From Basidiobolus meristosporus CBS 931.73 (Eukaryota; Fungi; Basidiobolomycota), in contig MCFE01000019.1 of the NCBI GenBank assembly GCA_002104905.1, forward strand, positions 124,001 through 188,000: a stretch of 64,000 nucleotides of DNA, read 5' to 3'. Shown piece by piece: positions 10,969 through 42,556 of the stretch. Both the position numbers and the translations under genes were made by a program. Below the pieces are notes generated by a model that was given only the letters and a program-made list of their open reading frames with translations, ran no database searches and was not told the DNA's origin. The first letter of the stretch is position 1. Each line of letters begins with the position of its first letter.

Positions 10969-13383
10969 ATGAGCACCTATCGCCAACCCTACTCTGACCA
11001 TCCGTTAGCTCATGACAGCCATGGGTATTCCCCGGAGAACCCATTTAACGATCCTCAAGGAAATGAGCATATAGAGGAGCTCTATAATGCAAACATAGCC
11101 CCTCCTCCAGGCTCCAGGCGGTATAGACAATACATTGAAGATCGCCGTAAGAGTATCCGGCACATTGAGCTAATTTCCGGTAATTTGGTGATCGAATGTC
11201 CCATTGCAGATAAAATCCTTGAGAGAGCGCCTAGCAAGGGAGAAGAGTTTGAAACAATGCGATACACCGCGGCAACTTGTGACCCAAATGATTTTCTGCA
11301 TAACAGATATACCTTGCGTCCAGCAATGTTTGGTCGCAGTACAGAGCTTTTTATCGTGATGACCATGTACAACGAGGATGAGCAACTTTTCGTCAAGACT
11401 TTTACCGGAGTCATAAAGAACATCCGGCACCTCTGTAACCGCTCCAAGTCGAAGGTGTGGGGTAATGAGGGGTGGAAGAAATGCGTTGTCTGCGTTGTGG
11501 CTGATGGTCGAACCAAAGTTCATCCAAGAGTTTTGAAGGTTTTAGGCGCCATGGGTGTTTATCAAGATGGCATTGCGCAGAGTACGGTCAATGGAAAGAA
11601 TGTTACTGCACATATCTATGAATATACCTCTCAGCTTTACCTTGACGGTGATATGAGGGTGCATTCCATCGCTGAGCAGGACTTCGTACCTATACAAATG
11701 GTCTTTTGCTTGAAGGAAAAAAACGCCAAGAAACTGAACTCGCATCGTTGGTTTTTCAACGCTTTTGCCCCACTTCTCAACCCCAACGTGTGTATTCTGC
11801 TAGATGTTGGAACCCGTCCTAGTGGTACTTCGATCTATCACCTGTGGAAAGCATTCGACAGGAATCCGAATGTAGGGGGCGCCTGCGGTGAAATCTGTGT
11901 TGAGTTGGGCTCTGGCTGCTCAAATCTTTGGAACCCTTTGGTTGCGGCCCAAAACTTCGAATACAAGATGAGCAATATTTTGGATAAACCATTGGAGAGT
12001 GTTTTTGGATACATCAGCGTGTTACCTGGAGCGTTCTCAGCCTATCGCTACGCTGCATTGAAAAACACCTCCCCTGGCGTTGGTCCACTTGCCTCATACT
12101 TTAAAGGGGAATCCATGCACGGCGCTGATGCCACAGGTGGTATCTTTGAAGCTAACATGTATCTCGCTGAGGATCGTATTCTCTGCTTTGAGCTGTGTGC
12201 CAAGAAAAACTGCAAATGGGTTCTCAAATACGTAAAATCAGCCAAGGCGGAGACTGACGTTCCAGATAATTGGCCCGAGTTTATTTCACAGAGACGGCGC
12301 TGGTTGAACGGATCTCAATTTGCTGCATTCTTTGCCACGGCACATTGGTTCCAGATCTGGAAAACAAACCACAGTCTCTACCGTAAAGCATTGTTCATGA
12401 TTCAATTCATCTATAATGTTGTCAACTTGTTCTTCTCGTGGTTCGCCCTTGGTAATTTCTACCTCACCTTTTATTTCATTGGCCAGGAGACGTCTTCCGA
12501 TGACCACGAAGGAGGCCCAGATCCCTTCTTTCACAAATCAAAATACGTCTACTCCATAGTGCGTGAGATTTTCCTACTGGGCATCATAGTGCAGTTCGTA
12601 CTATCGTTGGGAAATCGCCCGCAGGGGTCCAAGATCATCTACCTTCTCTGTGTATATTTGTTTGCCTTCGTAATGGCCATTATGCTATACACTATTGGCT
12701 TCAACCTAACAGTCTATTTCAGCGATCCCGATGTCTACAACAACCTATTGAAGCAGCCATTCACCAAAGAGACAGTCAACATTTTCATTGCTGTGGCCTC
12801 CACCTACGGACTATACTTTGTATCCTCGTTTCTTTACTTCGAGCCATGGCACATGTTCACCTCCTTTGTCCAGTACATGTTCATCTTCCCATCATATGTG
12901 TGCATCCTCATGGTGTACGCATTCTGTAATACACATGATGTATCTTGGGGCACCAAAGGTGACAACAATGCCTCCGCCAACCTTGGAACCGTTACATCCC
13001 TCACGAATAAGAAGGGTGTCGAGGTGGTCGCTGTGGAAGTCCCCACTGAAAAGCAAGACGTCAACGCATTGTATGCTGACCTATTATCCGATCTCCAGAT
13101 GAAGCCCGAGCCGGAGAAACAACAAACAGATGCTGCTACAAAACGGGAAGATTACTACCGGCTATTCCGTACACATACGGTGCTTATCTGGATGTTTAGC
13201 AACGTTGTTCTGATTTTGGCATTTCAATCCGATGTTGTCAACGGTTGGATCCGCAGCGTTGCTGGGGGCTATGTCAGCTCTAGGCCCTATCTGGATTTCA
13301 TCTTTTGGTCAATGGCTGGATTGTCAGCATTCAAATTTCTGGGCTGCGTGATATATTTGTACTTGAGGATCATGTTTGGTTGA
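10969..13383 (+). CDS. Chitin synthase, division 1 (class I/II-like), intronless
   Basis: 804-aa ORF with [57 protein letters not shown] and QRRRW motifs plus C-terminal TM helices. Confidence 0.97.
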
Positions 13384-13915
13384 TATTGCTCCAGAGCTTT
13401 GTAATTAATGCAATGTCTAGGACTCACACATGCCTGATTGATTTGGCGTATCTTGTTACTCGCAGGACAACTTCGTTTGCTGGATTCATCAAGTTGGATA
13501 AAATACAGGGATTGCCTATAGGATAAAGATAGCTTACGATTGGCTATCGTGAAATCTACCAACCATAACCACAACATTCTCAAGAGAAATCAATTTAAAC
13601 ACTGACAAGGATCTCTAAACGTCAGTGAACTCCCTTAGAGCGGGGCATTTTTGACGTGTAAATTTGATTACCAGTCCAGCAATGGATGTTGATCCGATTT
13701 TTGACGGGAAGTTTCACTAGCTCTCCACACCAAAAAATTCCACTTCCCAAGGGATTTATTTCAAAGAAAAAAGGCCTGAAAGGAGATGTAACTGGGATGC
13801 TCCGAAAAAGAAAAGCACCGTGATTCTTTAAAGATGCAAATGGTCGGTTCAATTCGAAAAAAGAACGCAGAAACGTTGGTTGGTGAATGGTATAAATGGT
13901 TCGGACGTAAACCGC

Positions 13916-14238
13916 TTAGTGGGACAGATATTTGCGTCCCTTGAGCTTTCTCCGGTTGAGGATCCTACGTCCGGACTTGGTGCGGATTCTTGCCAAGAAA
14001 CCGTGGCGTCTTTTGCGAACTAGATTACTGGGCTGGTACTCGTTACCATAAGTGACGCATCGAACCTGCTCCATTCCGTTAAGACGGAGTCCCAAAGGAA
14101 TGCTAAAATGAGACATACGATTTAGCATATGAACCCAGGGTGCAGGTAGGTAGGCCACGATTTGACTTACTTGAGGGCATTGGAAGGTCCAGCAAAACGA
14201 CTATTTTGTAAGAGGGAAGGTTTAGTTATGCGTGGCAT
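13916..14238 (-). CDS. MRPL34: Mitochondrial ribosomal protein bL34m, one intron
   Basis: C-terminal [44 protein letters not shown] is the L34 signature. Leader exon [10 protein letters not shown]... is joined by a GTAAGT...TTTAG intron. Confidence 0.9.
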
Positions 14239-15298
14239 GTGTTTGATAGAAAGTTCATGAGTATTGTGACTAAAATTACCTGGCGAAATGGCCAGCTAAC
14301 GACTGAACCCCAGTGACATTTCTCAACGTAGGTTGACGAATGCTAGTCAACAAGCTGAAAGGTCTGGTAAGTAATTGAAACATGCTGGAGCGCCAAGAAG
14401 TTTGTTAATGCAGACTATTCAAGCTCAAGTTAAAGGCCCTTTTCGTCCTACAAAACCAGCAAGATTTTTGAATTTCAACTCTGGGGTCGGTCATCAAACA
14501 TACAAATTTTCATTTCCCAAAATGATCAATTCTGGTTGGTTTGAGGGTGAATATAATTAATCAAGATATGCTCGAATAAACAAATAAATGAGGCAACTGG
14601 TTTACCTTGGAGACAGTGGAGATAAGTGCCATCCAAAATGCCAACTTACAAATGCATTCACGTAAGATGTTTGTATCGTTTTGGCATCTCATCTGGTGAT
14701 GGGTGGGTGAGTGTTCGCGAGGAGGAAAACCAATTTCTACGGAGTCTCTATGGGTGTGATTTACATTGGCCTAATTATCAAATCGAGATATGCATTGTAT
14801 TCTTCTAGAAATATCGCACCAGGATCGTATTTGCATTGAGCATAAGCAGTGTATGGTTTGAAGATCATTTTTCCAATTTACATATAGGGCTCTATTCTAC
14901 CCTCGTGGTAAAGGACTCGACTTGTGCTTATCGATAAGGTACTTTGGGAAAGGTGCCCAAGTCAATTGGCTTTCGCCCGACCAATGGAGCTCGAACCTTG
15001 TCCAATTTCTGCCGTCGCCAGTAGGCCCCCATACTCTTCTCCCAAATACAGTTAACCAGGTAAGATGGCAGAAGGCCGTGCATGCTTTGCTACTTCGATT
15101 GGTTGTGCGCGGCTACAACCTGCTGGTATGAAGACCAAAAGATACATGGCCACAAGGTGAAGGAATATTAATAATTAACTTTTACTTGACAATAAATATA
15201 TTAACAGTGAAGGGAGGGAAAGAATACAATAGAATAGATGCTTTGAGTTGATTGATGAATACAGTAGATGAAGAGGGAAATGCAACCTGGCTCCCTTG

Positions 15299-16159
15299 CT
15301 AATATAGTCTCTGCAGAGGCCAAACATCATTCTTCGAATTGATTGCTCCAACCAATATCGGAAAATCGTAGATGGATGAGCAATTGCCCAGCTTCCATGA
15401 GTCTATTCGGAGGCGGGTGGGATATTGCTTGCTGGTATGACAGATATTTCTGTCCACGGATTTTAACTTGCCAGTAGGTCGTCCATGGCCCTTCCCTTTA
15501 CTCTGCGGTACGGTCAAGGCTCTCTGGACTTCGGTCAACAGCTCTGCGCACCAAAACTCGTACTGTTCTTTTGACACGTGAAGTCTATATTGGATACAGC
15601 ATAGAAACTCCAATTCCAAATCATTTACTTGTGACAGAGTGGAGTTCGTGTAACGAGCCCAATCCATATTCAATGCGCTGATCTCCTGGTGATATTTAGC
15701 GGCAACTATCAACGCACCCAGAAACGTGTTTTTGGCGAAGTACAAGCGGTCGCTGGAATCGGTCTCCAATGTGGCCAGTTCGTCGAATCTCTCCTCACCA
15801 AATAGCGGAGCGGCTAACCCCATTTCTACTAGACAGTCATCACCATGGAGCTCGTGTTGTCGACCGAAAACATTATTCTCGATAATTCTACGTATTCTGT
15901 ACAGGTAGTAGAGAGAAATCATCACTGTAGAATGAAGCACCCGGGAGGTTTTCACTATCTCTCGGACGAATCCTCGAAATATCAGTCTTTTCGTCCGGGA
16001 AACAGCACCGAACGGGTGCCATACTCTATCGATCACGTATTCAACGGTGTCTATGTAGGGTTATTTCAATTATCTCGAAATACGATAGAAGCTGGGCAGG
16101 AAGGCTCACTTACCAACAAGAGATTCTAGTTCTCCATCGGCCACGCCAATGTAATGCAT
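15299..16159 (-). CDS. Pho80/Pcl5/Clg1-like cyclin, one intron near the 5' end
   Basis: FVREIVKTSRV..STVMISLYYLYRIR, FLGALIVAAKY, QVNDLELEFLCCIQYRLHV form a cyclin N fold. Upstream exon MHYIGVADGELESLV joins in frame via GTAAGT...CATAG. Confidence 0.8.
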
Positions 16160-17735
16160 ATCAGAGAGGGGCGTTATAACAGTGAAGGGATATGGGAGGT
16201 AACAAGAAAAATGTATTTGTGAAGTGTTGGTGCTCAGCGGTCGAGACGGTTGGGCCAGTTTTATAGCTTATCGATACGTCGGAGGGTAGGCAAGCTGTAT
16301 AAATAAAGGTAAGACTTGCAAAATGCAATTCAGATAGCTTTCTCAAAAAGTCCAGCGCTGACCGGTTTTAATTTAAATCGACTCAAGGTGATCGAACCTA
16401 GTTAGTAGAGGGCTGACCATGTGACACGATTTCAAACATTTCAAGTATAATTCGTGGCCCAGATCGGTGCATCGAGCCGTTTCCAATCCAACAATCTGAC
16501 CAATTTTACTGCCAGGAATTTCCATTTCAATATTACATTCGCCTTCAACCGATCGCTCCTATTCCTTACGATTTATAGACAATATCGACAAGATGGAATT
16601 GTACGAGTTGAGGGATAGGCTTAGCCGAACAATCCCACGGCCCATTGCCGCTCGTCACTTTGCCGGGATTTGTGTTTCGTAGTGATTACACAGCGGTTTT
16701 CATGAAACGAACGTTTCAGCAGTCAATGGTGCCCTGAATTCATCATAAACCCATTAGTCGGCAACAATGTTGCCACGTAAGTCCATGCATACTTTGACGT
16801 AGCGATCATGACAGTAGCCGGGATGTTTAAGTACATACCCAGGTGAAGTGGAGACGGCATAGTGAGATCCTCTCAGTCAGACAATCGCATACTAGGCCTC
16901 AGTATCCGATGTCCAGCAAAGCTGAGTCCATACCTCAGTCCAAGAAGTTTCTATGGGGGAAGCCTCTTGCCAAGTGAACTGCCGCCAACTGAGGCAGAAT
17001 ATTAATGTATTATATATATAAATATGTTAATGTAATATATACACAATTGATCCGCATTTGTATTTGAGTTTGGGATCTTGTATATAAGCATATATATATG
17101 TGTGTGTTTTACACCCAGTTCCCTTAATTGGAGTGGCTGAATACATCTGATATCACTTGGACGACTGCATTGCATTCGAAACAGATACCTCTCACCGCGC
17201 CATGCCATATTGTGGAAACAACTAAATTTAGTTGTCGAACGGATGATTACTGTTACTCGAAATGTTAACGAAAGACTTCGTACGCTACTAGATCCAACTG
17301 GCAAGCACTCATAACATGTGGTTGCAGCAAAGTCGGTGTTGGATTCTTGCATAGATGGGTGAAGCTGTGCTGCCAACTCTGGTTCAATGCTAAAGTCCCT
17401 AAGGATGCAATGGGTGGGGTTTAATGAATGGTCACTCGTTGGTTAATATGCAAGCTTGGTATCTCTTGTATGGGCATTAGTACTGGTCATTTGCACTGCC
17501 CGGCGTAGACTACGTGCTTAATGGGTACGGTTTCCCTGTCACAAGAGTCCAGAGGTTATTGTCCGGCTCCATCGTCGGAGCCCTGTATCAATGGGCTGAA
17601 TTCCAATTCCTAAATATATACTGGGGACTCGGAGCTCACTTTATATAGTTCAAGAATTTATTTCATAGACAGGGAAAATTTCGGCAACCTATAAAGACAG
17701 GATACACGAAAATAACTGAAATATCGCAGGAATAA

Positions 17736-18453
17736 TTAACGGTTGCCTAAGGGAGAAATCAGGTCAGCACATGTGTACACATAGAAAGTACGCTAGAAAC
17801 ACTTACTCTTGGCGACACGCTCCAATTCGTCCTTCTTCTTGATGGCGTAACTGTTAGAGGAGCCCTTAGCAGCGTTGATGAGCTCATCAGCCAAGCATTC
17901 AGCAATGGTCTTGACATTTCTGAAAGCAGATTCACGGGTACCAGTGGTCAAAAGGTGAATGGCTTGGTTGACTCTTCTCAAAGGAGAAACATCGACAGCC
18001 TGTCTACGGACAGTGCCGGAGCTACCGATACGGGTAGAGTCTTCACGGGGTCCGGAGTTGATGATGGCATCAATGAGGACTTGAAGAGGGTTTTGATCGG
18101 TAAGAAGGTTGATGATCTCAAAAGCGTGCTTGACGATACGGACAGCCATGAGCTTCTTTCCGTTGTTACGTCCGTGCATCATGAGGGAGTTGGTAAGACG
18201 TTCAACAATAGGGCACTACAGAGCACAAAAGGTTAGCAGACTGAACCCAGTGGAGGATATCCAGATCCCATACTTGAGCCTTTCTGAACTTCTTGGTGGC
18301 ATATCTACCAGCGGTGTGGGGCAAGTAGACGGGAGCTCTGATTTGGAGATAGTCGGTCAAGGAGATGTCCTTGATTTCGAGATCTTCATAAGACCACTTG
18401 TTGAAAAGCTGGATGCCTTGAGCCTCGGTGGTGATTTCAGCAGGAAGAGCCAT
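17736..18453 (-). CDS. RPS5: 40S ribosomal protein S5 (uS7), two coding introns
   Basis: [20 protein letters not shown]...[16 protein letters not shown] | [35 protein letters not shown]...DELERVAKS|NR*. Confidence 0.97.
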
Positions 18454-18934
18454 GTTCTGTTTCCCCTAAAAAGGTAAACACCCATTAGTGCATATTCGAG
18501 GATGGATGGAAGCGAGAGTGAGCGGATATCGCTACACAAGGCGACTAGCAATAACGCAACTGACCGTAGTACTGAAGGAATAACAACCGACAGAAAAGAC
18601 CGTTCACCTTTCGCCTGACAGTGAATTTTGTTCATTTCGAACGCACCTTACAACCAATCACATTGGATCAAATCAGCAGACAAATTCTCGAGGATCAACG
18701 GAGCCGAGTGCGGAAATGAGGATTGCCATATTTTTTCGTCGGAATCTGGTTGGGATATCTTCGTATAACGGGGACTACTATTTGTGAATTAGGAGAGGGT
18801 TGGTGATGAGGTTGAACCAAAGATATCGTTTGGTAATATATCGGATTGATTTCTTCAAGCACCCAACTTTCTAGTCCTTCTAATATCCAACTTCAAGTGG
18901 GCTCACATTTCACTGTACACATTCACTCATAGTG

Positions 18935-36544: not shown

Positions 36545-37337
36545 ATGTCAAGAAATATTTCCAAGTGGACCCTAGACTTTTCGTCTCTAGATCAGTCAAG
36601 GTTCTAATCAAGAAAGACTGTCCTGAGAATATTTCTTTCTAACTCCTCTTCTGACTCTTAGAACTCGTAAAAACGAGCAGCTCGATCCTCCTGGCTTTGT
36701 GCTTGCCTCCACCGGCTCATCTAGAAATTCCAATGTTGATATCTTACACTAGACTATTTTTTCAACATCAGCTAACCATACACCACATACTAGAAAAATG
36801 TCAAGCAAGTTGACGCAGGAGCTTCGGCCAATTTGAAATTGAAGGTGAATCCCTGACTCAGCCGTTCAACACCCACTATTTTATTAAACTCCTCCCTCAC
36901 TATAGAAAGCCTGGGAGGCCTCTCTAGCCCCAGCCAAGAACATTCCCATGAACGCGTTCATGCTTTATATGTCTGGTAGTGGAGTTCAGATTTTCAGTAT
37001 TATCATCACTGGAATGTTGTTCTTCCAACCTTTCCAGGCTTTGATGAACCTGAATTCAGGTATGTTCCCCTTTACAAGTCAGCCAACTGGCCCTTTATTA
37101 ATCCCACGACTTCTGGTAGTGTTCGATCGTTTCGCAGGAAAAACTTCCAAAGGAAAGAACCATTCGGCCGACGAGAATGTTGACCTTACCCTTCCCAAAC
37201 TTGTCTATGTTGCTGTGCAAGTGGCCATCATGTGTATGGGTGTTTACAAGCTATCTTCTATGGGCTTGCTACCTACTGCCAGCTCCGATTGGTTAGCCTT
37301 TATGGATCCAAAGCAAATGTTGGAGCTCACGCCCTGA
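36545..37337 (+). CDS. EMC4: ER membrane protein complex subunit 4 (TMEM85), several introns
   Basis: KAWEASLAPAKNIPMNAFMLYMSGSGVQIFSIIITGMLFFQP and YKLSSMGLLPTASSDWLAF. Confidence 0.92.
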
Positions 37338-37501
37338 TGGTCTTGATATGAAGAGGATTCAATGGAACATTTACGTTTGTTACGTGATTAATGTTAAATA
37401 AATCAAAGCTCTTGAAAACCAATGATTCGAAATCTATCGACTGGATTTTATTGAAATGCTTCTAAACAAGTGTACAATGCCTTCGAGAGTCTATAAATGA
37501 G

Positions 37502-40500
37502 TTATACAGCAGATGCGACCATACCACCATACATGTCTTCAAGATCAAGCTTGGGATCTCCTATCAGTTTCAACCCGAACTTATCAGATAGAATCTTCAC
37601 CGCACTAGGTCTCAAGAAGGCAGGCAGTTGTGGACCGACTCTGATGTTCTGGATGCCGAGGGAAAGTAACGAAAGAAGGACAACCACAGCCTTCTGTTCA
37701 AACCAAGATAAAACGATGGACAATGGAAGATCATGGATGGTACAGTTCAACGCTTCTGCGAGTGCTGAGGCGATTTGAATTGCGGAGTAAGCGTCGTTAC
37801 ATTGGCCCATATCGAGCAATCTGGGAATGCCAGAGTCTCCAATGGTCTTCCATTCCAGCGAATTGATTCGGAATTTGCCACACCCAGAGGTAAGAACCAC
37901 TGCACTCTCTGGTAACATCTTGGCCAGGTCAGTATAATAGCTACGCTCTCCCTCGTAGCCATCACATCCTCCGATAACAAACACCCTGCTGATATCTCCG
38001 GTTTCAAGGGCCTTCAAGACTGTGGGAGCTACGTTCAAAACAGCTTCAGAGCTGAAACCAACTTGATAACTATCGGTAATCGGGGTGAAACTACTGGGGG
38101 GATATTCAAATTCCGGAGTGTCCTCATTGAAACCAGGTGAGTCCAAGGCTACTTTGATAACAGCGCTATAATCAAGGTCATCGCCGACATGTGGAATGTT
38201 TGGCCAGCCTACAACACCAACGGTAAACAGTCTGCCCTGATAATCATCTTTAGGTGGGGTCAGGCAATTAGTGGTCATGACAATGGCTCCGGGGAAGTGT
38301 GGGAATTCCACAGATTGTCTTTGCCATGCCACGCCATAGTGGCCTGCCAGGTGTTTGTATTGGCGAAGTTTAGGATAACCATGAGCTGGTAACATCTCAC
38401 CGTGAGTATAGATGTTGATACCTAATCCTTCGGTTTGACGAAGCAACGAGTCCAAGAACATGAAGTCGTGACCAGAAACCAAAATACATTTGCCAGGGCG
38501 TGGCTTGAGAGATACGGTATGTGGTGATTGAGCTCCAAAGGTTTTGTTGGCATTGTGCAAGACATCCATACAAATTAGATTGACTTGGCCGAGTTCCATC
38601 AAGCAAGCCAAGGTCTTGTCCATATCTTTGGAATCCTTAGTGGTCAGGAAGTAAAACGCCTTATGGAGGAATTCGTATATACGACGATCCTCGTGGGCTA
38701 GAACTAGGGCATGGTCAGCGTAGGCACTCAGACCCTTTAGTCCATACACGATCATTTCTTGTAATCCTACCAAGGCATCGTTCTTGGTGGCTCTCATACG
38801 GCTAAGAATACCCACTTCCTTGCCCTTAGAGACAAGCATATCCTCGATGTCACCAACGGCACCAGGTGCATTGTCAAGTACCTCGGAGATACTCTCTGGA
38901 ATTGGGCATTTTTTGGGGCGTATATTCAACCTTTTGCAAATGGCCTGGTACTGTACACTCAACCGCTTTGTGTAATCCCGGCAATCTTGATGGAATTGAA
39001 GGAACCTGTTGCTGTCGAAATTGACATTGGTCAGGGTGGAAAAGGTCGCTTTCAACGAGTAATGGTTCACTTCTGGAAATTCGACCTCAGATACTTCTAC
39101 TTTGTCCGAATGCTCGTTTTGCAATTGGCGTAAGTTATAAGCATACCAAGAGAGACGCTTCAAGCAGGTAATGAGAAGATCTTGAAGAGCCGCTACTTCA
39201 GGAGTCTTACCGCACACGCCAATAGTAGTGCATCCACGTCCTTGGTAAGTTTGCTCGCATTGATAGCAGAACATCTTTGCGTCTTCATATAATGTTGCAG
39301 TGGGTACTTCTTGTCCTTGGGCTTGGCCGCCTCTCTTAAGGATGATGCTTTTAAGCGCATTCTCCTCGTCAACGCTTTTTGCGTAGGCCTCTACCTCCCA
39401 GCGATTTTGCTTTCTCAAGTTGGCGATGATCTCCAAAGATTCCTCGTACGAGACTTGCTTATTGGCTTGCAGGCACTCGCCAATGGTAATCTCCATGGCA
39501 CCTGGGATCAGTCCTCCCAAACCGCAGTACAGGTACATACCATTGTTGTCTAAATAGTCGGTCACCTTTTCTGGGAAGTCCAGCATTCTAACGGCACAGT
39601 TCTTCTTGTGATCACGGGACGCAGCATCAATCACCTCTACCAGGCCCTTGCGAGTAAAGTTATCCAGTTCGTCCTTGAAGAGATATTCATGCTCATAATA
39701 TCTCATTCCGTAATAGAGTCTGATACGTGTCATCTCATGCCCTTGCTCAAGCAATACTTCTCGGTGTTGGAGAATGGAACGGAACACACCAATGCCGCTA
39801 CCAAGTGCTACACCCAAGATGGGGGTATCAAGGCGCTCAGGAAGGTGGACCAAACCGGCGTGGATCTTCAAGAAAACATAGGGATCGGCGACATCGGGGG
39901 ATTTCTTAGAAAGATAAGTCGAGGTTAAACCTTGGAACCTGCCGCCAGTTTCAGTTGCCCATTCTTCGACGAAGAAAACGATATCAATCTTGTCTTTGGA
40001 AACAAGTGGAGATGAGGCAATGGAGTAGTATCTACTGGAGATTTTAGGGATGTTGCTAATGAATTGCTCCAAGGAGATCTTGACGGATGGGTAACGCTCA
40101 AGTACATCCACTACACTGAATACTGTTGATGTTGAGAGTTTCATATACATGTTCCCGGCCAGCATGTCTGAGGCTAAACTTTCAAGTGCCTCTTGCTCAT
40201 TAATATCCGAGGCTAAACAGCTGAATCCTTCGACAAGAGCTCTACTGGGGATCGAGCTGATGTCCAAGTAATTCTTTAGTAACTGACGGATGGTCACTAT
40301 AGTTGGTAATGCCACTGAATCGTCCATGGGTTGAATCTCCACCACCATATCTAAATCAACATCCAGCCGTCTGGCAGCTCTCACCACCAATTCGTCGGGG
40401 TTTTCTGGGAACACCTGAACGTGACCGGCAACTTGATACTCCTGATTTGTTTGGCTGATATCGAATGTTACCATGCATCCGGTTCTTTCGTAATCGGGAG

Positions 40501-41095
40501 AGGTAAGTCGCTTATTGGACACAACAGGAACTTTGATGTAGCCTTCATGGTTCACCTCGGGTACTGTACGGTTGGATTGTTGAATTTGAACAGAAACCGG
40601 TAGAGTCATCTTCACATCCGAGCCGGTCAATTTCGTCCAAAAGGCTTTTAACCAGGGACGAAAAGCCGTTTCGTGACCATTTGGATCGTACTCATCGCCC
40701 ATTCCAACAGGCATGATGTTAAAACCGCCAAGTTCACTCATCCGTTGATCCAACAGCTTGGCAGCCTTGTTGAAATTCTCCTGTAATGTTCGGTTTCCCA
40801 GTCCGAAGACAGCATATCTAGTGTGGCGGAATAGATTGGGGGAATGGTCCTGGCGCTTCAGATAGGACCAGAGAGAAGCGGCAGAGTCGGGAAATTCACC
40901 GTTGTAGAATGTGCTTGACAAAAATACAATGAGAGGCTCCGTTGGAAGGCTCTCATGCGCAACTTCATCCATACGGGCTAATCTGACATCGAAGCTGCGA
41001 ATCTTGGCGAAAGTCTGAACAATCTTGGCATAGCTCTCGGTAGTTCCGGTCTGAGTACCGTAGAGAATTAGCATGCGCGGCTTTTCGGACAACAT
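37502..41095 (-). CDS. hcp: Flavodoxin-FAD/NAD(P)H reductase :: hybrid cluster protein (Hcp/prismane) fusion, 1197 aa, intronless
   Basis: aa ~8-155 flavodoxin (LYGTQTGTTE, STFYNGEFPD, YAVFGLGN). aa ~185-571 FAD/NAD(P)H module (RYYSIASSP, GLTSTYL, LGSGIGVFRS, LYYGMR, YCG). aa 608-1197 Hcp (MFCYQCEQTYQGRGCTTIGVCGK, SGHD, THGEMLPAH, TTNC, GGCDG, SGCGK, GQCND, SWFEQKA). One stop-free frame throughout. Confidence 0.95.
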   Translation of the reverse strand: MLSEKPRMLILYGTQTGTTESYAKIVQTFAKIRSFDVRLARMDEVAHESLPTEPLIVFLSSTFYNGEFPDSAASLWSYLKRQDHSPNLFRHTRYAVFGLGNRTLQENFNKAAKLLDQRMSELGGFNIMPVGMGDEYDPNGHETAFRPWLKAFWTKLTGSDVKMTLPVSVQIQQSNRTVPEVNHEGYIKVPVVSNKRLTSPDYERTGCMVTFDISQTNQEYQVAGHVQVFPENPDELVVRAARRLDVDLDMVVEIQPMDDSVALPTIVTIRQLLKNYLDISSIPSRALVEGFSCLASDINEQEALESLASDMLAGNMYMKLSTSTVFSVVDVLERYPSVKISLEQFISNIPKISSRYYSIASSPLVSKDKIDIVFFVEEWATETGGRFQGLTSTYLSKKSPDVADPYVFLKIHAGLVHLPERLDTPILGVALGSGIGVFRSILQHREVLLEQGHEMTRIRLYYGMRYYEHEYLFKDELDNFTRKGLVEVIDAASRDHKKNCAVRMLDFPEKVTDYLDNNGMYLYCGLGGLIPGAMEITIGECLQANKQVSYEESLEIIANLRKQNRWEVEAYAKSVDEENALKSIILKRGGQAQGQEVPTATLYEDAKMFCYQCEQTYQGRGCTTIGVCGKTPEVAALQDLLITCLKRLSWYAYNLRQLQNEHSDKVEVSEVEFPEVNHYSLKATFSTLTNVNFDSNRFLQFHQDCRDYTKRLSVQYQAICKRLNIRPKKCPIPESISEVLDNAPGAVGDIEDMLVSKGKEVGILSRMRATKNDALVGLQEMIVYGLKGLSAYADHALVLAHEDRRIYEFLHKAFYFLTTKDSKDMDKTLACLMELGQVNLICMDVLHNANKTFGAQSPHTVSLKPRPGKCILVSGHDFMFLDSLLRQTEGLGINIYTHGEMLPAHGYPKLRQYKHLAGHYGVAWQRQSVEFPHFPGAIVMTTNCLTPPKDDYQGRLFTVGVVGWPNIPHVGDDLDYSAVIKVALDSPGFNEDTPEFEYPPSSFTPITDSYQVGFSSEAVLNVAPTVLKALETGDISRVFVIGGCDGYEGERSYYTDLAKMLPESAVVLTSGCGKFRINSLEWKTIGDSGIPRLLDMGQCNDAYSAIQIASALAEALNCTIHDLPLSIVLSWFEQKAVVVLLSLLSLGIQNIRVGPQLPAFLRPSAVKILSDKFGLKLIGDPKLDLEDMYGGMVASAV

Positions 41096-42556
41096 TCTAG
41101 ATAGTTGAGCAACACTTCAAAAGGCTTGGTAATCACCTTGGTGAAAACCGAGGTATTTATTTCCCAAGCTACGCTAGTCTAGGCTGCTAATGGAACTCTT
41201 ACAATCGGCAAACATCTCAAGATTCCCATATGAGGTCAGTTTGTAATCTGCACCTAATACGATACAGATTTTATATTCATTCAATAAAGTTTACGATACA
41301 AATAGACAATTCAAATAATGATTTAGTAGTTCTTGATTTGTGATTTTGCTCTTTATAGATATTGATGCGCTTACAATATTACGAAAGTGACCAAAGCCAT
41401 GCTCTCCATTATTGCGGGGCCTAACTGGTAGAAAGGTATCAGCGAGAGATGGCGGAGCATTTGGAAAGCCTTCCAACAGGCACCTAGTGGACCAATCAGA
41501 ACTCAGGAGCAGACGCGCTCCAAAGATATGCACGTATTAATATAACCGCACCACCCTTCACGGAAACAAAACAAACTATTCTCCATCCATGAGGTTTAAG
41601 ACATTGCAAGATCAAACACGGGCAGTACTTTGGCAGGAACATCCATGATTTAATCGTCGATTGGAATCGTAACCACAAGAAATATTGGTTGGAGACAAAA
41701 TACAAATCCACACAAAAAGGTAAGCCTCACGGTTCAACAATTCCATCACAACATTCACTCATTTTAAGGGAGGTTCAGTGTAAAATCAACTCCTATTTAG
41801 CGTTGTCAACTTAAAGAAATGCCTGGAGTATCACGACTTGCTTGTCGCATTCAATGGGCCCGAGGACTGTTAGGCGCGTTTTTGTTGGTGGATCGACACT
41901 AGGGTTCGGGTAGCGTCCGCGGAGAATGGAATGATCCATATGAATGACTCGGAATGGGTTTGATGCATAATCAAATCAAATCCAGCCCACCCATGATCAT
42001 CAACTAGTGGGAATGGCGGTGATCGAAACTGCCTGGTCTAATGGTAAAAATAGTGTAAAACTAGTCAGCAGTACGTTTATATCGTATTGCTCAAGGATCT
42101 CAGAATTTCGGAAGAAGTTAGAGCAACACTGGCTGATTGTGTTCAAGTGTCCTGACAAAATACAAATGATCCGTTTGATCAGATGAATCCAAGTTTCACT
42201 CAACCTAGTTAAATTAAACTCACCTGTAGGAGCTCATATTTCTTTTAACGTAAACCGAGGCAACCATACCACATAATAGATTCGCGTGTCGATCAACACC
42301 GCATGGGAAACCTCAGAATTCATTAGGTAGTGATTCACAAGAGTAGACACATTGGAGGTTGAGAAACACCATTAGAAACACCCAAGTCAGAAAACCAGCT
42401 GCGCAATAGCTCTATACCTGTGTGCACTTTGCCTTAGCCAGATATTCAATCGAAAGGATGCGGATTGTGTATATAAGAAGGCTGGGAGGCTACCGTCTAC
42501 TCGCCAATACTCCACCAACAAAGCTCTAGGACCCATTTCATCCCAGAACTTCTTGA

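What the first reader, a model, noticed from the sequence alone, without database searches (positions are those of the whole stretch)
37502..41095. Diflavin reductase-hybrid cluster protein fusion: candidate self-sufficient NAD(P)H-dependent NO/hydroxylamine reductase in a fungus
Seen: one stop-free 1197-codon frame joining flavodoxin (FMN), an FAD/NAD(P)H module and, after a ~36-aa linker (39275-39382), a full Hcp from MFCYQC (39274). It keeps the four N-terminal [4Fe-4S] cysteines and all hybrid-cluster ligand motifs (SGHD His, THGE Glu, TTNC, GGCDG, SGCG, GQCND, WFEQK). There is no membrane anchor or obvious targeting peptide. Established: bacterial Hcp reduces NO to N2O and has hydroxylamine reductase activity, but needs a separate donor (Hcr in enterobacteria; ferredoxin/rubredoxin-type carriers in anaerobes); fungal NO defence is usually attributed to flavohemoglobin, GSNO reductase and P450nor. 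Inference: a one-polypeptide chain NAD(P)H>FAD>FMN>[4Fe-4S]>hybrid cluster for O2-independent nitrosative-stress detoxification or N2O production, analogous to P450BM3/NOS but with the reductase at the N-terminus. I know of no characterised protein with this architecture but could not search to confirm novelty.
Basis: partly seen in the sequence, partly recalled or inferred. Interest (0 to 1): 0.93.

Follow-up and report, generated by a model that had tools for sequence, protein, structure and literature searches.

The report
Fungal diflavin reductase fused to Hcp
A Basidiobolus-type fungus carries an intact, intron-free gene that joins an NADPH-type two-flavin reductase to a complete hybrid cluster protein, one member of a widespread but apparently unstudied eukaryotic family that probably reduces nitric oxide or hydroxylamine without a separate electron carrier.

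Summary
Window 37502-41095 on the minus strand is one 1197-codon ORF. It encodes Flavodoxin_1, FAD_binding_1, NAD_binding_1, a 36-residue linker and a full-length Hcp, with every cluster ligand present.

- **Not an artefact.** The locus is identical in independent contigs of the source reads. It sits among spliced fungal housekeeping genes and is syntenic with a B. meristosporus contig.
- **Not unique.** More than 60 database proteins share the architecture at 38-52% identity. They come from chytrids, monoblepharids, oomycetes, ichthyosporeans, Chromera, an ochrophyte and many metagenomes. Their Hcp domains form one clade among eukaryotic Hcps.
- **No prokaryotic junction.** None of the best 80 of 595 prokaryotic matches covered it.
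- **Constrained throughout.** The linker has a conserved D-x-E-N-x-L-K helix. Two Basidiobolus copies align without gaps, with saturated synonymous sites but pN about 0.08 in every module.
- **Transcription.** A cDNA-like run holds a 3.2-kb contig of a paralogue that crosses the junction. This copy has only low-depth fragments in the Hcp half.
- **Literature.** I found no paper describing the fusion.

Verdict: a real, probably self-sufficient NAD(P)H-to-Hcp enzyme, and a new variant of a known kind. Substrate and activity remain inferred.

The parts
37502..41095 (-). Whole coding sequence: 1197 codons plus a stop at 37502-37504, with no intron.
   Evidence: ORF list and translation. The sequence is identical in 16-kb Logan contigs of the source DNA runs.
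40652..41068 (-). FMN (flavodoxin) domain, residues 10-148. The phosphate loop is GTQTGTTE (13-20).
   Evidence: Pfam Flavodoxin_1 at 99 bits. It aligns to the rat CPR FMN domain. Loop residues are conserved in 44-47 of 48 relatives.
39914..40546 (-). FAD-binding domain with connecting subdomain, residues 184-394. It includes R355-Y-Y357-S358 and G389.
   Evidence: Pfam FAD_binding_1 at 160 bits. R355, Y357, S358 and G389 are invariant in 48 sequences.
39503..39811 (-). NAD(P)H-binding domain, residues 429-531. It carries G432-S-G434-I-G, S493-R494-D495 at the 2'-phosphate site, and C524-G.
   Evidence: Pfam NAD_binding_1 at 23.6 bits against a cut-off of 22. In the family, S493 is in 43 of 48 sequences, and position 494 is His in 34 and Arg in 5.
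39383..39385 (-). Y571, the C-terminal aromatic residue of the reductase. It is the counterpart of the FAD-stacking Trp677 of rat CPR.
   Evidence: Position 571 is F (29) or Y (19) in 48 of 48 sequences. The equivalence to CPR Trp677 is an inference from the R-W/Y-x-x-E-x-F/Y pattern.
39275..39382 (-). Linker, residues 572-607. It comprises a conserved D576-x-E578-N579-x-L-K helix, a flexible stretch of about 13 residues, and a P/T-L/I-A element.
   Evidence: Linker length is 29-38 aa in 46 of 48 relatives, and D576, E578 and N579 are at least 90% conserved. The AF2 model shows a helix at 575-588 and pLDDT below 50 at 583-595. pN is 0.059 against the B. meristosporus copy.
37505..39274 (-). 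Hybrid cluster protein module, residues 608-1197.
   Evidence: Pfam Prismane at 465 bits and NCBIfam hydroxylamine reductase at 649 bits. The best solved relative is 7de4, E. coli Hcp, at 463 bits. The model superposes on 7de4 and 1e1d with TM 0.93.
39212..39268 (-). N-terminal four-cysteine motif C610-X2-C613-X8-C622-X5-C628 for the [4Fe-4S] cubane (class-I spacing).
   Evidence: Translation. The spacing is 8 and 5 in 61 of 62 fused proteins. E. coli Hcp has the longer class-II spacing in the alignment.
37691..38470 (-). Hybrid [4Fe-2S-2O] cluster ligand set: H876, E900, C944, C1044, C1072, C1099 and E1133, plus K1135.
   Evidence: These residues align to the same motifs in E. coli and M. thermolithotrophicus Hcp. 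They are invariant or at least 90% conserved in 48 relatives. Ligand identities come from established D. vulgaris and E. coli Hcp structures (my own knowledge).
38060..38131 (-). Family-specific segment, residues 989-1012, with conserved F996 and Y998. I speculate that it is a docking surface for the FMN domain.
   Evidence: The segment is 21-22 aa in 60 of 62 fused proteins. The median is 11 aa in bacterial and other Hcps, and it ranges from 10 to 33 aa in standalone eukaryotic Hcps. The docking role is inference only.

Best explanation
This is a genuine nuclear gene of a Basidiobolus-type fungus. It encodes one cytosolic polypeptide in which a CPR-like diflavin reductase (FMN domain, FAD domain, NAD(P)H domain) is tethered by a short, conserved linker to the N-terminus of a complete hybrid cluster protein.

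The most likely mechanism is as follows:
1. NADPH gives a hydride to FAD. The Ser-Arg pair at the 2'-phosphate site points to NADPH.
2. FAD passes single electrons to FMN in the closed conformation.
3. The FMN domain swings out and reduces the Hcp [4Fe-4S] cubane. The cubane's four cysteines begin only 39 residues after the FAD-stacking aromatic residue.
4. The cubane feeds the [4Fe-2S-2O] hybrid cluster, which reduces a small N-O compound. That would be NO to N2O, or hydroxylamine to ammonium.

The fused reductase replaces the separate Hcr or ferredoxin partners of bacteria.

What is shown: the architecture, the ligand set, the folds, the family-wide conservation, the constraint on all modules, and a junction-spanning cDNA contig in a paralogue.

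What is inferred: the electron path, the nucleotide preference, the substrate and the physiological role. The likely role is nitrosative-stress defence or hydroxylamine detoxification in low-oxygen habitats such as animal guts.
For: - **Architecture.** A single stop-free ORF with four Pfam domains and NCBIfam Hcp equivalogs above their cut-offs.
- **Ligands.** All cubane and hybrid-cluster ligands are present and conserved.
- **Flavin and nucleotide motifs.** These are conserved.
- **Model.** AF2 gives mean pLDDT 84.7.
  - The Hcp half has TM 0.93 to E. coli and D. vulgaris Hcp.
  - The reductase half has TM 0.84 and rmsd 3.3 A to closed CPR.
  - No PDB chain covers both halves.
- **Family.**
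  - More than 60 proteins share the architecture across fungi, oomycetes, ichthyosporeans, alveolates and algae.
  - Their Hcp domains form one clade: FastTree 97-99 and IQ-TREE quick SH-aLRT 94.
  - The reductase half has no standalone relative above 28% identity.
- **Constraint.**
  - The linker length and its D-x-E-N motif are conserved.
  - The alignment to the B. meristosporus copy is gapless over 1197 residues, with pS about 0.80 and pN 0.06-0.10 in every module.
- **Transcription.** In cDNA-like run X3, the neighbour's introns are spliced out.
  - A 3210-nt contig of a roughly 82%-identical paralogue is colinear with 37523-40310, across the junction, at depth 174.
  - Exact low-depth contigs of this copy cover parts of the Hcp half.
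- **Genomic setting.**
  - The neighbours are EMC4, a WD40 protein and argininosuccinate synthase.
  - There is synteny with B. meristosporus.
  - A chytrid orthologue carries introns.
Against: - No activity, cofactor or expression data exist for this protein.
- For this copy, the cDNA-like run shows contigs only in the Hcp half (37658-38982), at depth 10-13. Nothing covers the reductase half, so a full-length transcript of this copy is not demonstrated.
- pTM is 0.57, so the relative placement of the reductase and Hcp modules is not reliably predicted. No FMN-to-cubane distance could be measured.
- Most family members have His rather than Arg at position 494. NADPH versus NADH is therefore uncertain across the family.
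- The aromatic residue corresponding to CPR Tyr178 on the FMN is not conserved here.
- The Met at the Hcp start is conserved, which leaves an internal-start isoform possible.
- The physiological substrate of Hcp is debated even in bacteria (my own knowledge).
Confidence: 0.72

Rival explanations
1. The locus yields an Hcp-only product, or an Hcp-only isoform alongside the fusion. This would arise from an internal promoter or from translation starting at the conserved Met608. Hcp would then still work with a separate carrier.
For: In run X3, the exact-match contigs of this copy lie only in the Hcp half (37658-38034, 38080-38385, 38768-38982), and none lies upstream of 39134. Met608 is M in 62 of 63 fused proteins.
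Against: - Low depth (10-13) combined with 3' bias explains the missing 5' half equally well.
- The paralogue's 3210-nt contig runs through the junction.
- Met is just as conserved in Hcps with unrelated N-terminal extensions (43 of 46), so it is probably structural.
- The reductase half and linker are under the same purifying selection as Hcp.
- The reductase clade exists only in fused form.
Confidence: 0.1
2. The fusion is self-sufficient, but its real job is not NO or hydroxylamine detoxification. Alternatives are NADPH peroxidase activity, protein S-nitrosylation or transnitrosylation control, or a step in nitrogen assimilation that salvages hydroxylamine or nitrite-derived intermediates.
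For: Bacterial Hcp has been credited with hydroxylamine reductase, peroxidase, NO reductase and S-nitrosylase roles (my own knowledge). The Acanthamoeba paper PMC13632651 still lists the eukaryotic function as open. Diatom hcp is co-discussed with nitrite reductase in nitrogen metabolism in PMC2945787.
Against: Nothing in the sequence separates these activities. No nitrogen-assimilation genes flank the locus; the neighbours are EMC4, a WD40 protein and argininosuccinate synthase. High-affinity NO reduction is the best-supported bacterial role (Wang et al. 2016, as cited).
Confidence: 0.15
3. The ORF is a contaminant, a mis-assembly or a very recent bacterial transfer, and not a working fungal gene.
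For: - The 3.6-kb gene has no intron, although its neighbour has three introns within 600 bp.
- Basidiobolus is known for bacterial gene acquisitions (PMC7466969, listed).
- Hcp as such is of prokaryotic type.
Against: - The whole 36600-42000 stretch is one contig in two read sets, without differences.
- A second strain or species holds a copy about 90% identical that is colinear with the EMC4 neighbour.
- There is synteny with B. meristosporus.
- GC content is like the rest of the window.
- The nearest relatives are eukaryotic and have the same architecture.
- A chytrid orthologue has introns.
- None of the best 80 of 595 prokaryotic matches covers the reductase-linker part of the junction query.
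Confidence: 0.02

Closest known systems
Hybrid cluster protein with its separate reductase (E. coli Hcp-Hcr, PDB 7de4; D. vulgaris Hcp, 1e1d/1e2u)
   Same: - The Hcp module is full length and 42% identical to E. coli Hcp. The model superposes with TM 0.93.
- All seven hybrid-cluster ligands and the four N-terminal cysteines are present.
- The overall logic is shared: pyridine nucleotide > flavin > Fe-S entry cluster > hybrid cluster.
   Different: - Electron supply is built in, and it is a two-flavin CPR-type reductase. Hcr is instead an FNR-like FAD/[2Fe-2S] protein.
- The cysteine spacing is class I (CX2CX8CX5C), although the body of the protein scores best against the class-II E. coli enzyme.
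- There is an extra conserved segment of about 11 residues at 989-1012.
- The gene is eukaryotic and nuclear, and the protein has no targeting peptide.
Self-sufficient diflavin-reductase fusions: P450 BM3 (CYP102A1), nitric oxide synthase, and the sulfite reductase CysJ/CysI system
   Same: The FMN-FAD-NADPH module is the same. PDB hits are CPR at 190 bits, BM3 at 182, NOS at 178 and CysJ at 91. The principle of a swinging FMN domain that serves a covalently attached or tightly bound metallo-catalyst is also shared.
   Different: - The reductase is N-terminal and the catalyst C-terminal, the reverse of BM3 and NOS.
- The acceptor is an Fe-S cubane rather than a haem or sirohaem.
- The reductase is only 25-28% identical to any standalone diflavin reductase.
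- It falls far below the CysJ equivalog cut-off, at 188 against 668 bits.
Standalone eukaryotic Hcps (Chlamydomonas and other green algae, Mastigamoeba, Paratrimastix, Acanthamoeba, Alphamonas)
   Same: They belong to the same eukaryote-dominated Hcp clade in the tree. Alphamonas and the green-algal and amoebal Hcps are the nearest non-fused relatives. They are linked to anaerobic or hypoxic physiology (PMC13632651).
   Different: Those proteins are about 550-700 aa. They often have organelle-targeting extensions, and Acanthamoeba HCP is mitochondrial. They depend on separate donors. The protein here carries its own reductase and is predicted to be cytosolic.
Database orthologues with the same architecture (for example Basidiobolus meristosporus 'hybrid cluster protein', Polychytrium 'Prismane-like protein', and Aphanomyces, Saprolegnia and Sphaeroforma 'hydroxylamine reductase')
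   Same: The domain order, length (about 1160-1270 aa), linker motif and ligand set are the same, at 38-87% identity.
   Different: These carry only automatic annotation. I found no paper that discusses the fusion. Gonapodya copies carry an N-terminal extension that this protein lacks.

Membership tests
Hybrid cluster protein (Hcp; Pfam Prismane PF03063, NCBIfam hydroxylamine reductase NF003658/TIGR01703) | The profile score exceeds the curated cut-off over the full profile length. | tested here: met
   Prismane scores 465 bits against a cut-off of 27, covering profile positions 1-512 of 513. NF003658 scores 649 bits against 367, and TIGR01703 scores 616 against 361.
Hybrid cluster protein (Hcp; Pfam Prismane PF03063, NCBIfam hydroxylamine reductase NF003658/TIGR01703) | N-terminal four-cysteine motif that binds the electron-entry Fe-S cluster. 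| tested here: met
   C610, C613, C622 and C628 align with the cysteines of 7de4 and 8cnr. Each is conserved in 47 of 48 relatives.
Hybrid cluster protein (Hcp; Pfam Prismane PF03063, NCBIfam hydroxylamine reductase NF003658/TIGR01703) | Hybrid-cluster ligands: one His, two Glu and four Cys, including the persulfide Cys. | tested here: met
   H876, E900, C944, C1044, C1072, C1099 and E1133 sit in the conserved motifs. The assignment of ligand roles comes from published Hcp structures (my own knowledge).
Hybrid cluster protein (Hcp; Pfam Prismane PF03063, NCBIfam hydroxylamine reductase NF003658/TIGR01703) | Three-domain Hcp fold. | tested here: met
   The AF2 model against 7de4 gives TM 0.93 and rmsd 2.9 A, and against 1e1d gives TM 0.93.
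Hybrid cluster protein (Hcp; Pfam Prismane PF03063, NCBIfam hydroxylamine reductase NF003658/TIGR01703) | Presence of the [4Fe-2S-2O] cluster and NO or hydroxylamine reductase activity. | not testable with these tools
   This needs purified protein, EPR and enzyme assays.
Diflavin reductase family (CPR / CysJ / BM3 / NOS reductase type) | Flavodoxin_1, FAD_binding_1 and NAD_binding_1 in that order on one chain. | tested here: met
   Pfam domains lie at 10-148, 184-394 and 429-531. The whole half aligns to BM3 and NOS reductase in one stretch.
Diflavin reductase family (CPR / CysJ / BM3 / NOS reductase type) | Cofactor motifs: the FMN phosphate loop, R-x-Y-S for FAD, a Gly-rich NADPH loop, the catalytic Cys-Gly, and a C-terminal aromatic residue. 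| tested here: met
   The motifs are G13-x-Q-T-G-T, R355/Y357/S358, G432-x-G434, C524-G525 and F/Y571. All are at least 85% conserved in 48 relatives.
Diflavin reductase family (CPR / CysJ / BM3 / NOS reductase type) | NADPH (not NADH) specificity through the Ser-Arg 2'-phosphate site. | tested here: inconclusive
   S493-R494 is present in the three Basidiobolus proteins. Position 494 is His in 34 of 48 relatives.
Microsomal NADPH-cytochrome P450 reductase proper | N-terminal membrane anchor, and orthology to CPR. | tested here: not met
   The protein starts 7 residues before the first flavodoxin strand, with an upstream in-frame stop. It is only 25-28% identical to CPRs.
Sulfite reductase flavoprotein CysJ (TIGR01931) | The equivalog score exceeds the curated cut-off. 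| tested here: not met
   188 bits against a cut-off of 668.
Class II Hcp-Hcr two-component system (enterobacterial type) | An Hcr-type partner (FNR-like FAD plus [2Fe-2S]) and the long CX2CX11CX6C cysteine spacing. | tested here: not met
   The partner is a fused diflavin reductase. The spacing is CX2CX8CX5C.

The most novel reading that the evidence does not exclude
The diflavin reductase-Hcp fusion arose once within eukaryotes and then spread, partly by eukaryote-to-eukaryote transfer. Carriers include zoosporic and zygomycete fungi, oomycetes, ichthyosporeans, chromerids and marine algae. It would be a self-sufficient, cytosolic NADPH:NO (or hydroxylamine) oxidoreductase. That would be a previously unrecognised eukaryotic route of NO detoxification and N2O formation, independent of P450nor, flavohaemoglobin and flavodiiron proteins.
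Probability: 0.45. Interest if true: 0.72.

Novelty: new variant of a known kind. Interest (0 to 1): 0.58.

Why it matters
Hcp is a widespread enzyme whose physiological role and electron supply are still debated. In eukaryotes it has hardly been studied.

A natural single-chain version would be an experimentally convenient enzyme. It needs no partner protein, and its stoichiometry is fixed. It could help settle what Hcp reduces and how electrons enter the cubane.

If it makes N2O from NO, it adds an unaccounted source of this greenhouse gas in fungi, oomycetes and marine protists. It would also be a new nitrosative-stress defence in gut-associated and pathogenic lineages such as Basidiobolus, Aphanomyces and Saprolegnia.

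The family also shows repeated domain fusion around Hcp. Cytochrome b5/b5-reductase and rubredoxin/flavin-reductase versions also turned up. Finally, its patchy distribution suggests gene transfer between eukaryotes.

Tried and rejected
- **RNA runs.** A search for RNA-labelled runs holding the gene listed none. The 'any' search gave runs labelled 'DNA?'. One of them, X3, turned out to be cDNA-like because it skips three GT..AG introns of the neighbour. It did not cover the reductase half of this copy.
- **Identity of the X3 paralogue.** I tested whether the X3 paralogue contig is the B. meristosporus gene L002. Its loose-end sequences are absent from L002, so it is another copy.
- **Literature.** Nine full-text searches found no description of the fusion. 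They covered Hcp together with fusion, CPR, flavodoxin, diflavin, oomycete, chytrid, Basidiobolus and reductase domain. The Hcp papers by van Lis 2020 and Hagen 2022 are not held.
- **Prokaryotic fusion.** A junction-spanning alignment was scanned against one genome per prokaryotic species.
  - All top hits match only the Hcp part.
  - The one hit with longer coverage, L039, has a separate HD-domain gene upstream and a ferredoxin downstream.
- **dN/dS.** This could not be computed because synonymous sites are saturated (pS about 0.8). pN and pS are given instead.
- **Met608 as an internal start.** The residue is equally conserved in Hcps with unrelated N-terminal extensions, so it does not discriminate.
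- **Fungal monophyly.** The base of the opisthokont/oomycete subclade is a polytomy. Vertical descent and transfer into Basidiobolus cannot be separated.
- **Careful IQ-TREE run.** The run on the Hcp-domain subset did not finish. The quick tree is reported instead.
- **FMN-to-cubane distance.** This was not measurable. The tool returns no coordinates, and pTM is 0.57.

Full report
**Observation**

The ORF list places a 1197-aa ATG-initiated ORF at 37502-41095 on the minus strand. The plus strand is full of stops. The minus-strand translation is uninterrupted.

Pfam finds four domains:

| Domain | Residues | Bits |
|---|---|---|
| Flavodoxin_1 | 10-148 | 99 |
| FAD_binding_1 | 184-394 | 160 |
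| NAD_binding_1 | 429-531 | 23.6 (just above the cut-off of 22) |
| Prismane | 608-1185 | 465 |

The two NCBIfam 'hydroxylamine reductase' equivalogs score 649 and 616 bits, well above their cut-offs. The CysJ equivalog is far below its cut-off, at 188 against 668 bits.

An in-frame TGA lies eight codons upstream of the ATG, and the first flavodoxin strand begins at residue 7. There is therefore no anchor or presequence. The two named Basidiobolus homologues start identically.

**Cofactor sites**

Against solved structures, the Hcp half is closest to E. coli Hcp 7de4 (463 bits). Next come the M. thermolithotrophicus and Desulfovibrio enzymes. In those alignments the SGHD, THGE, TTNC, GGCDG, SGCG, GQCND and WFEQK motifs coincide.

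In an alignment of 48 full-length relatives, the corresponding H876, E900, C944, C1044, C1072, C1099, E1133 and K1135 are invariant or at least 90% conserved. So are the four N-terminal cysteines. The cysteine spacing is CX2CX8CX5C in 61 of 62 fused proteins. That is the class-I [4Fe-4S] pattern, even though the body of the protein scores best against the class-II E. coli enzyme.

The reductase half matches CPR (190 bits), P450 BM3 (182), NOS (178) and CysJ (91). The conserved features are:
- the FMN phosphate loop
- R355-x-Y357-S358
- G432-x-G434
- C524-G525
- the C-terminal aromatic residue at 571

The Basidiobolus proteins carry Ser493-Arg494 at the position of the CPR and CysJ 2'-phosphate site, which suggests NADPH. 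Most relatives have His there, so specificity across the family is open.

**Structure model**

AlphaFold2 with the 48-sequence alignment gives mean pLDDT 84.7 and pTM 0.57. Foldseek gives these superpositions:
- The Hcp half superposes on 7de4 and 1e1d at TM 0.93.
- The reductase half superposes on closed rat and human CPR at TM 0.84 and rmsd about 3.3 A.
- Open CPR and BM3 forms fit badly.
- No PDB chain covers both halves.

The linker models as a helix (575-588), followed by a low-confidence stretch (583-595) and a short helix (599-602). The relative position of the two halves is not trustworthy at this pTM, and no coordinates are returned. The FMN-to-cubane distance therefore could not be measured.

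**Is the locus real and fungal?**

- Logan contigs of the two source DNA runs hold 36600-42000 in one piece without differences.
- Neighbours are EMC4 (36660-37337), a WD40 protein and argininosuccinate synthase.
- Run X3, from the same study, has a 521-nt contig identical to EMC4 but lacking three GT..AG introns of 59-61 nt. X3 is therefore cDNA of the same strain.
- A different strain or species (X4-X6) holds a copy about 90% identical that is colinear with EMC4, plus a second copy about 82% identical.
- The B. meristosporus contig carrying P0002 shares the hcp fusion, ribosomal protein S7, a 281-aa gene and chitin synthase with the window.
- GC content is unremarkable.

Contamination and mis-assembly are excluded.

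**Transcription**

No RNA-labelled run was listed. In X3, this copy has three exact contigs at depth 10-13. All lie in the Hcp half, which is the 3' part of the gene.

At relaxed stringency, X3 also shows a 3210-nt contig at depth 174. It is about 82% identical and colinear with 37523-40310. The junction region is bridged by a diverged stretch of equal length. Its ends do not match the B. meristosporus gene.

An earlier first-stage note records a second such gene elsewhere in this genome (s1-199480). A fused transcript is thus shown for a paralogue, but not for the reductase half of the window copy.

**Constraint**

The window gene and the B. meristosporus gene are both intron-free 3594-nt ORFs. 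They align without a single gap. Synonymous sites are saturated (pS 0.78-0.93). Non-synonymous differences are 0.096 (FMN), 0.090 (FAD/NAD), 0.059 (linker) and 0.073 (Hcp). The whole chain, linker included, is under purifying selection.

**The family**

A whole-length search returned more than 60 proteins of about 1160-1280 aa with the same Pfam set:

| Source | Identity |
|---|---|
| B. meristosporus, B. ranarum | 86-87% |
| Chytrids (Polychytrium, Podochytrium, Siphonaria) | 49-52% |
| Ichthyosporeans (Creolimax, Sphaeroforma) | 49% |
| Oomycetes (Aphanomyces, Thraustotheca, Achlya, Saprolegnia) | 43-50% |
| Monoblepharids (Gonapodya x3, Hyaloraphidium) | 42-45% |
| Chromera, Chrysophaeum | 40-41% |
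| EukProt and MMETSP transcriptomes, metagenomes | about 37-51% |

Further points about the family:
- The Polychytrium gene spans 4439 nt for 1195 aa, so it has introns.
- An exhaustive HMMER search with the Hcp domain alone ranks fused proteins first. The nearest standalone proteins are Alphamonas, a Phycisphaerae bacterium, Mastigamoeba, Lentomonas, Paratrimastix and Photobacterium.
- In the Hcp-domain tree, all diflavin-fused proteins fall in one clade together with five short or partial entries. Support is FastTree 97-99 on 164 rows and IQ-TREE quick with the mixture model at SH-aLRT 94 on 72 rows.
- That clade lies inside a largely eukaryotic Hcp group with green algae and amoebae.
- A careful full-length tree splits the family into an opisthokont-plus-oomycete clade and a chromerid, algal and metagenomic clade, each at 100/100.
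- Oomycetes nest beside chytrids and ichthyosporeans at 100/100, which points to transfer between eukaryotes. The position of Basidiobolus is unresolved.
- The reductase half has no standalone relative above 28% identity. Only truncated family members score higher.
- A junction-spanning profile scanned over one genome per prokaryotic species gave hits to the Hcp part only. The single longer hit has a separate HD-domain gene upstream.

**Family-specific features**

- The linker is 29-38 aa in 46 of 48 members, with D576, E578 and N579 at least 90% conserved.
- Segment 989-1012 is 21-22 aa in 60 of 62 fused proteins, against a median of 11 in bacterial Hcps. F996 and Y998 in it are conserved.

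These are candidate inter-module contacts. That is inference only.

**Mechanism**

The best reading is NAD(P)H > FAD > FMN > [4Fe-4S] > hybrid cluster within one cytosolic chain. The FMN domain would shuttle between FAD and the cubane. The cubane's ligands start 39 residues after the FAD-stacking aromatic residue.

The architecture, motifs and constraint are shown. The electron path, the nucleotide and the substrate are inferred from the CPR and Hcp literature. The likely acceptors are NO (giving N2O) or hydroxylamine (giving ammonium). Peroxide reduction or nitrosylation roles cannot be excluded.

**Comparison with what is known**

The protein works like the bacterial Hcp-Hcr pair and like BM3 or NOS. 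It differs in three respects:
- the partner type (diflavin rather than FNR/[2Fe-2S])
- the domain order (reductase first)
- the acceptor (Fe-S rather than haem)

It meets every testable criterion for Hcp and for the diflavin reductase family. It fails those for CPR proper, CysJ and class-II Hcp-Hcr.

**Novelty**

Nine literature searches and several targeted reads found nothing on this fusion. A 2026 Cell paper still treats eukaryotic HCP function as open and mentions only standalone, mitochondrial forms. Two specialist Hcp papers could not be read.

The architecture is, however, already visible in public protein databases under automatic names. I therefore rate it a new, uncharacterised variant of a known kind, and not a categorically new system. 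It is one of several natural Hcp-reductase fusions.

Noticed in passing
window 36660-37337 (+): This is an EMC4 (ER membrane complex subunit 4) gene with three GT..AG introns of 59-61 nt: 36735-36793, 36843-36903 and 37058-37117. All three are spliced out in a 521-nt contig at depth 247 of run X3. That result shows that the run labelled 'DNA?' is in fact cDNA of the same strain.
   Followed up: partly
window 37502-41095 (-) and L002 10001-13594: Both Basidiobolus fusion genes are completely intron-free over 3.6 kb. The genome's neighbouring genes are intron-dense, and the Polychytrium orthologue (L003 5001-9439) has about 850 nt of introns. Intron loss, retro-copying and acquisition from elsewhere cannot be distinguished.
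   Followed up: partly
It is about 82% identical at the DNA level, ends in ...EVVAAAV, and has about 15 times the contig depth of the window copy in the cDNA-like run. A related strain (X4-X6) also has two copies.
   Followed up: partly
P0234, P0230, P0107, P0072 (database proteins): Other natural Hcp-partner fusions exist: Prismane + cytochrome b5 + FAD_binding_6 + NAD_binding_1 (902 aa); cytochrome b5 + Prismane (773 aa); rubredoxin + flavin reductase + Prismane (719 aa); and flavodoxin + Prismane without the FAD and NAD domains (756 aa). The last one nests inside the diflavin-fused clade.
   Followed up: partly
L001 2611-6333 and 6841-8727: On a 14.5-kb metagenome contig, the fused gene is followed on the same strand by a standalone Prismane gene of 628 aa. 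In the tree, a standalone Hcp (P0197) is sister to the Hcp domain of that fused protein, which suggests local duplication with loss or gain of the reductase.
   Followed up: no
P0026, P0029 (Gonapodya prolifera): The Gonapodya copies are 1258-1272 aa and carry an N-terminal extension (MLSKPSAATTPLIHLAALSAASPRAF...). It looks like an organelle-targeting peptide, unlike the Basidiobolus, chytrid and oomycete proteins.
   Followed up: no
window 11923-18467 vs L002 16455-23593: Ribosomal protein S7, a 281-aa gene and chitin synthase are colinear between the window and the B. meristosporus contig. The distance from the fusion gene to S7 is about 19 kb in the window and about 3 kb in B. meristosporus.
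   Followed up: no
full-length tree of the family: Oomycete proteins nest with chytrid and ichthyosporean proteins at 100/100 support, apart from the other stramenopile and alveolate sequences. This pattern suggests gene transfer between opisthokonts and oomycetes.
   Followed up: partly
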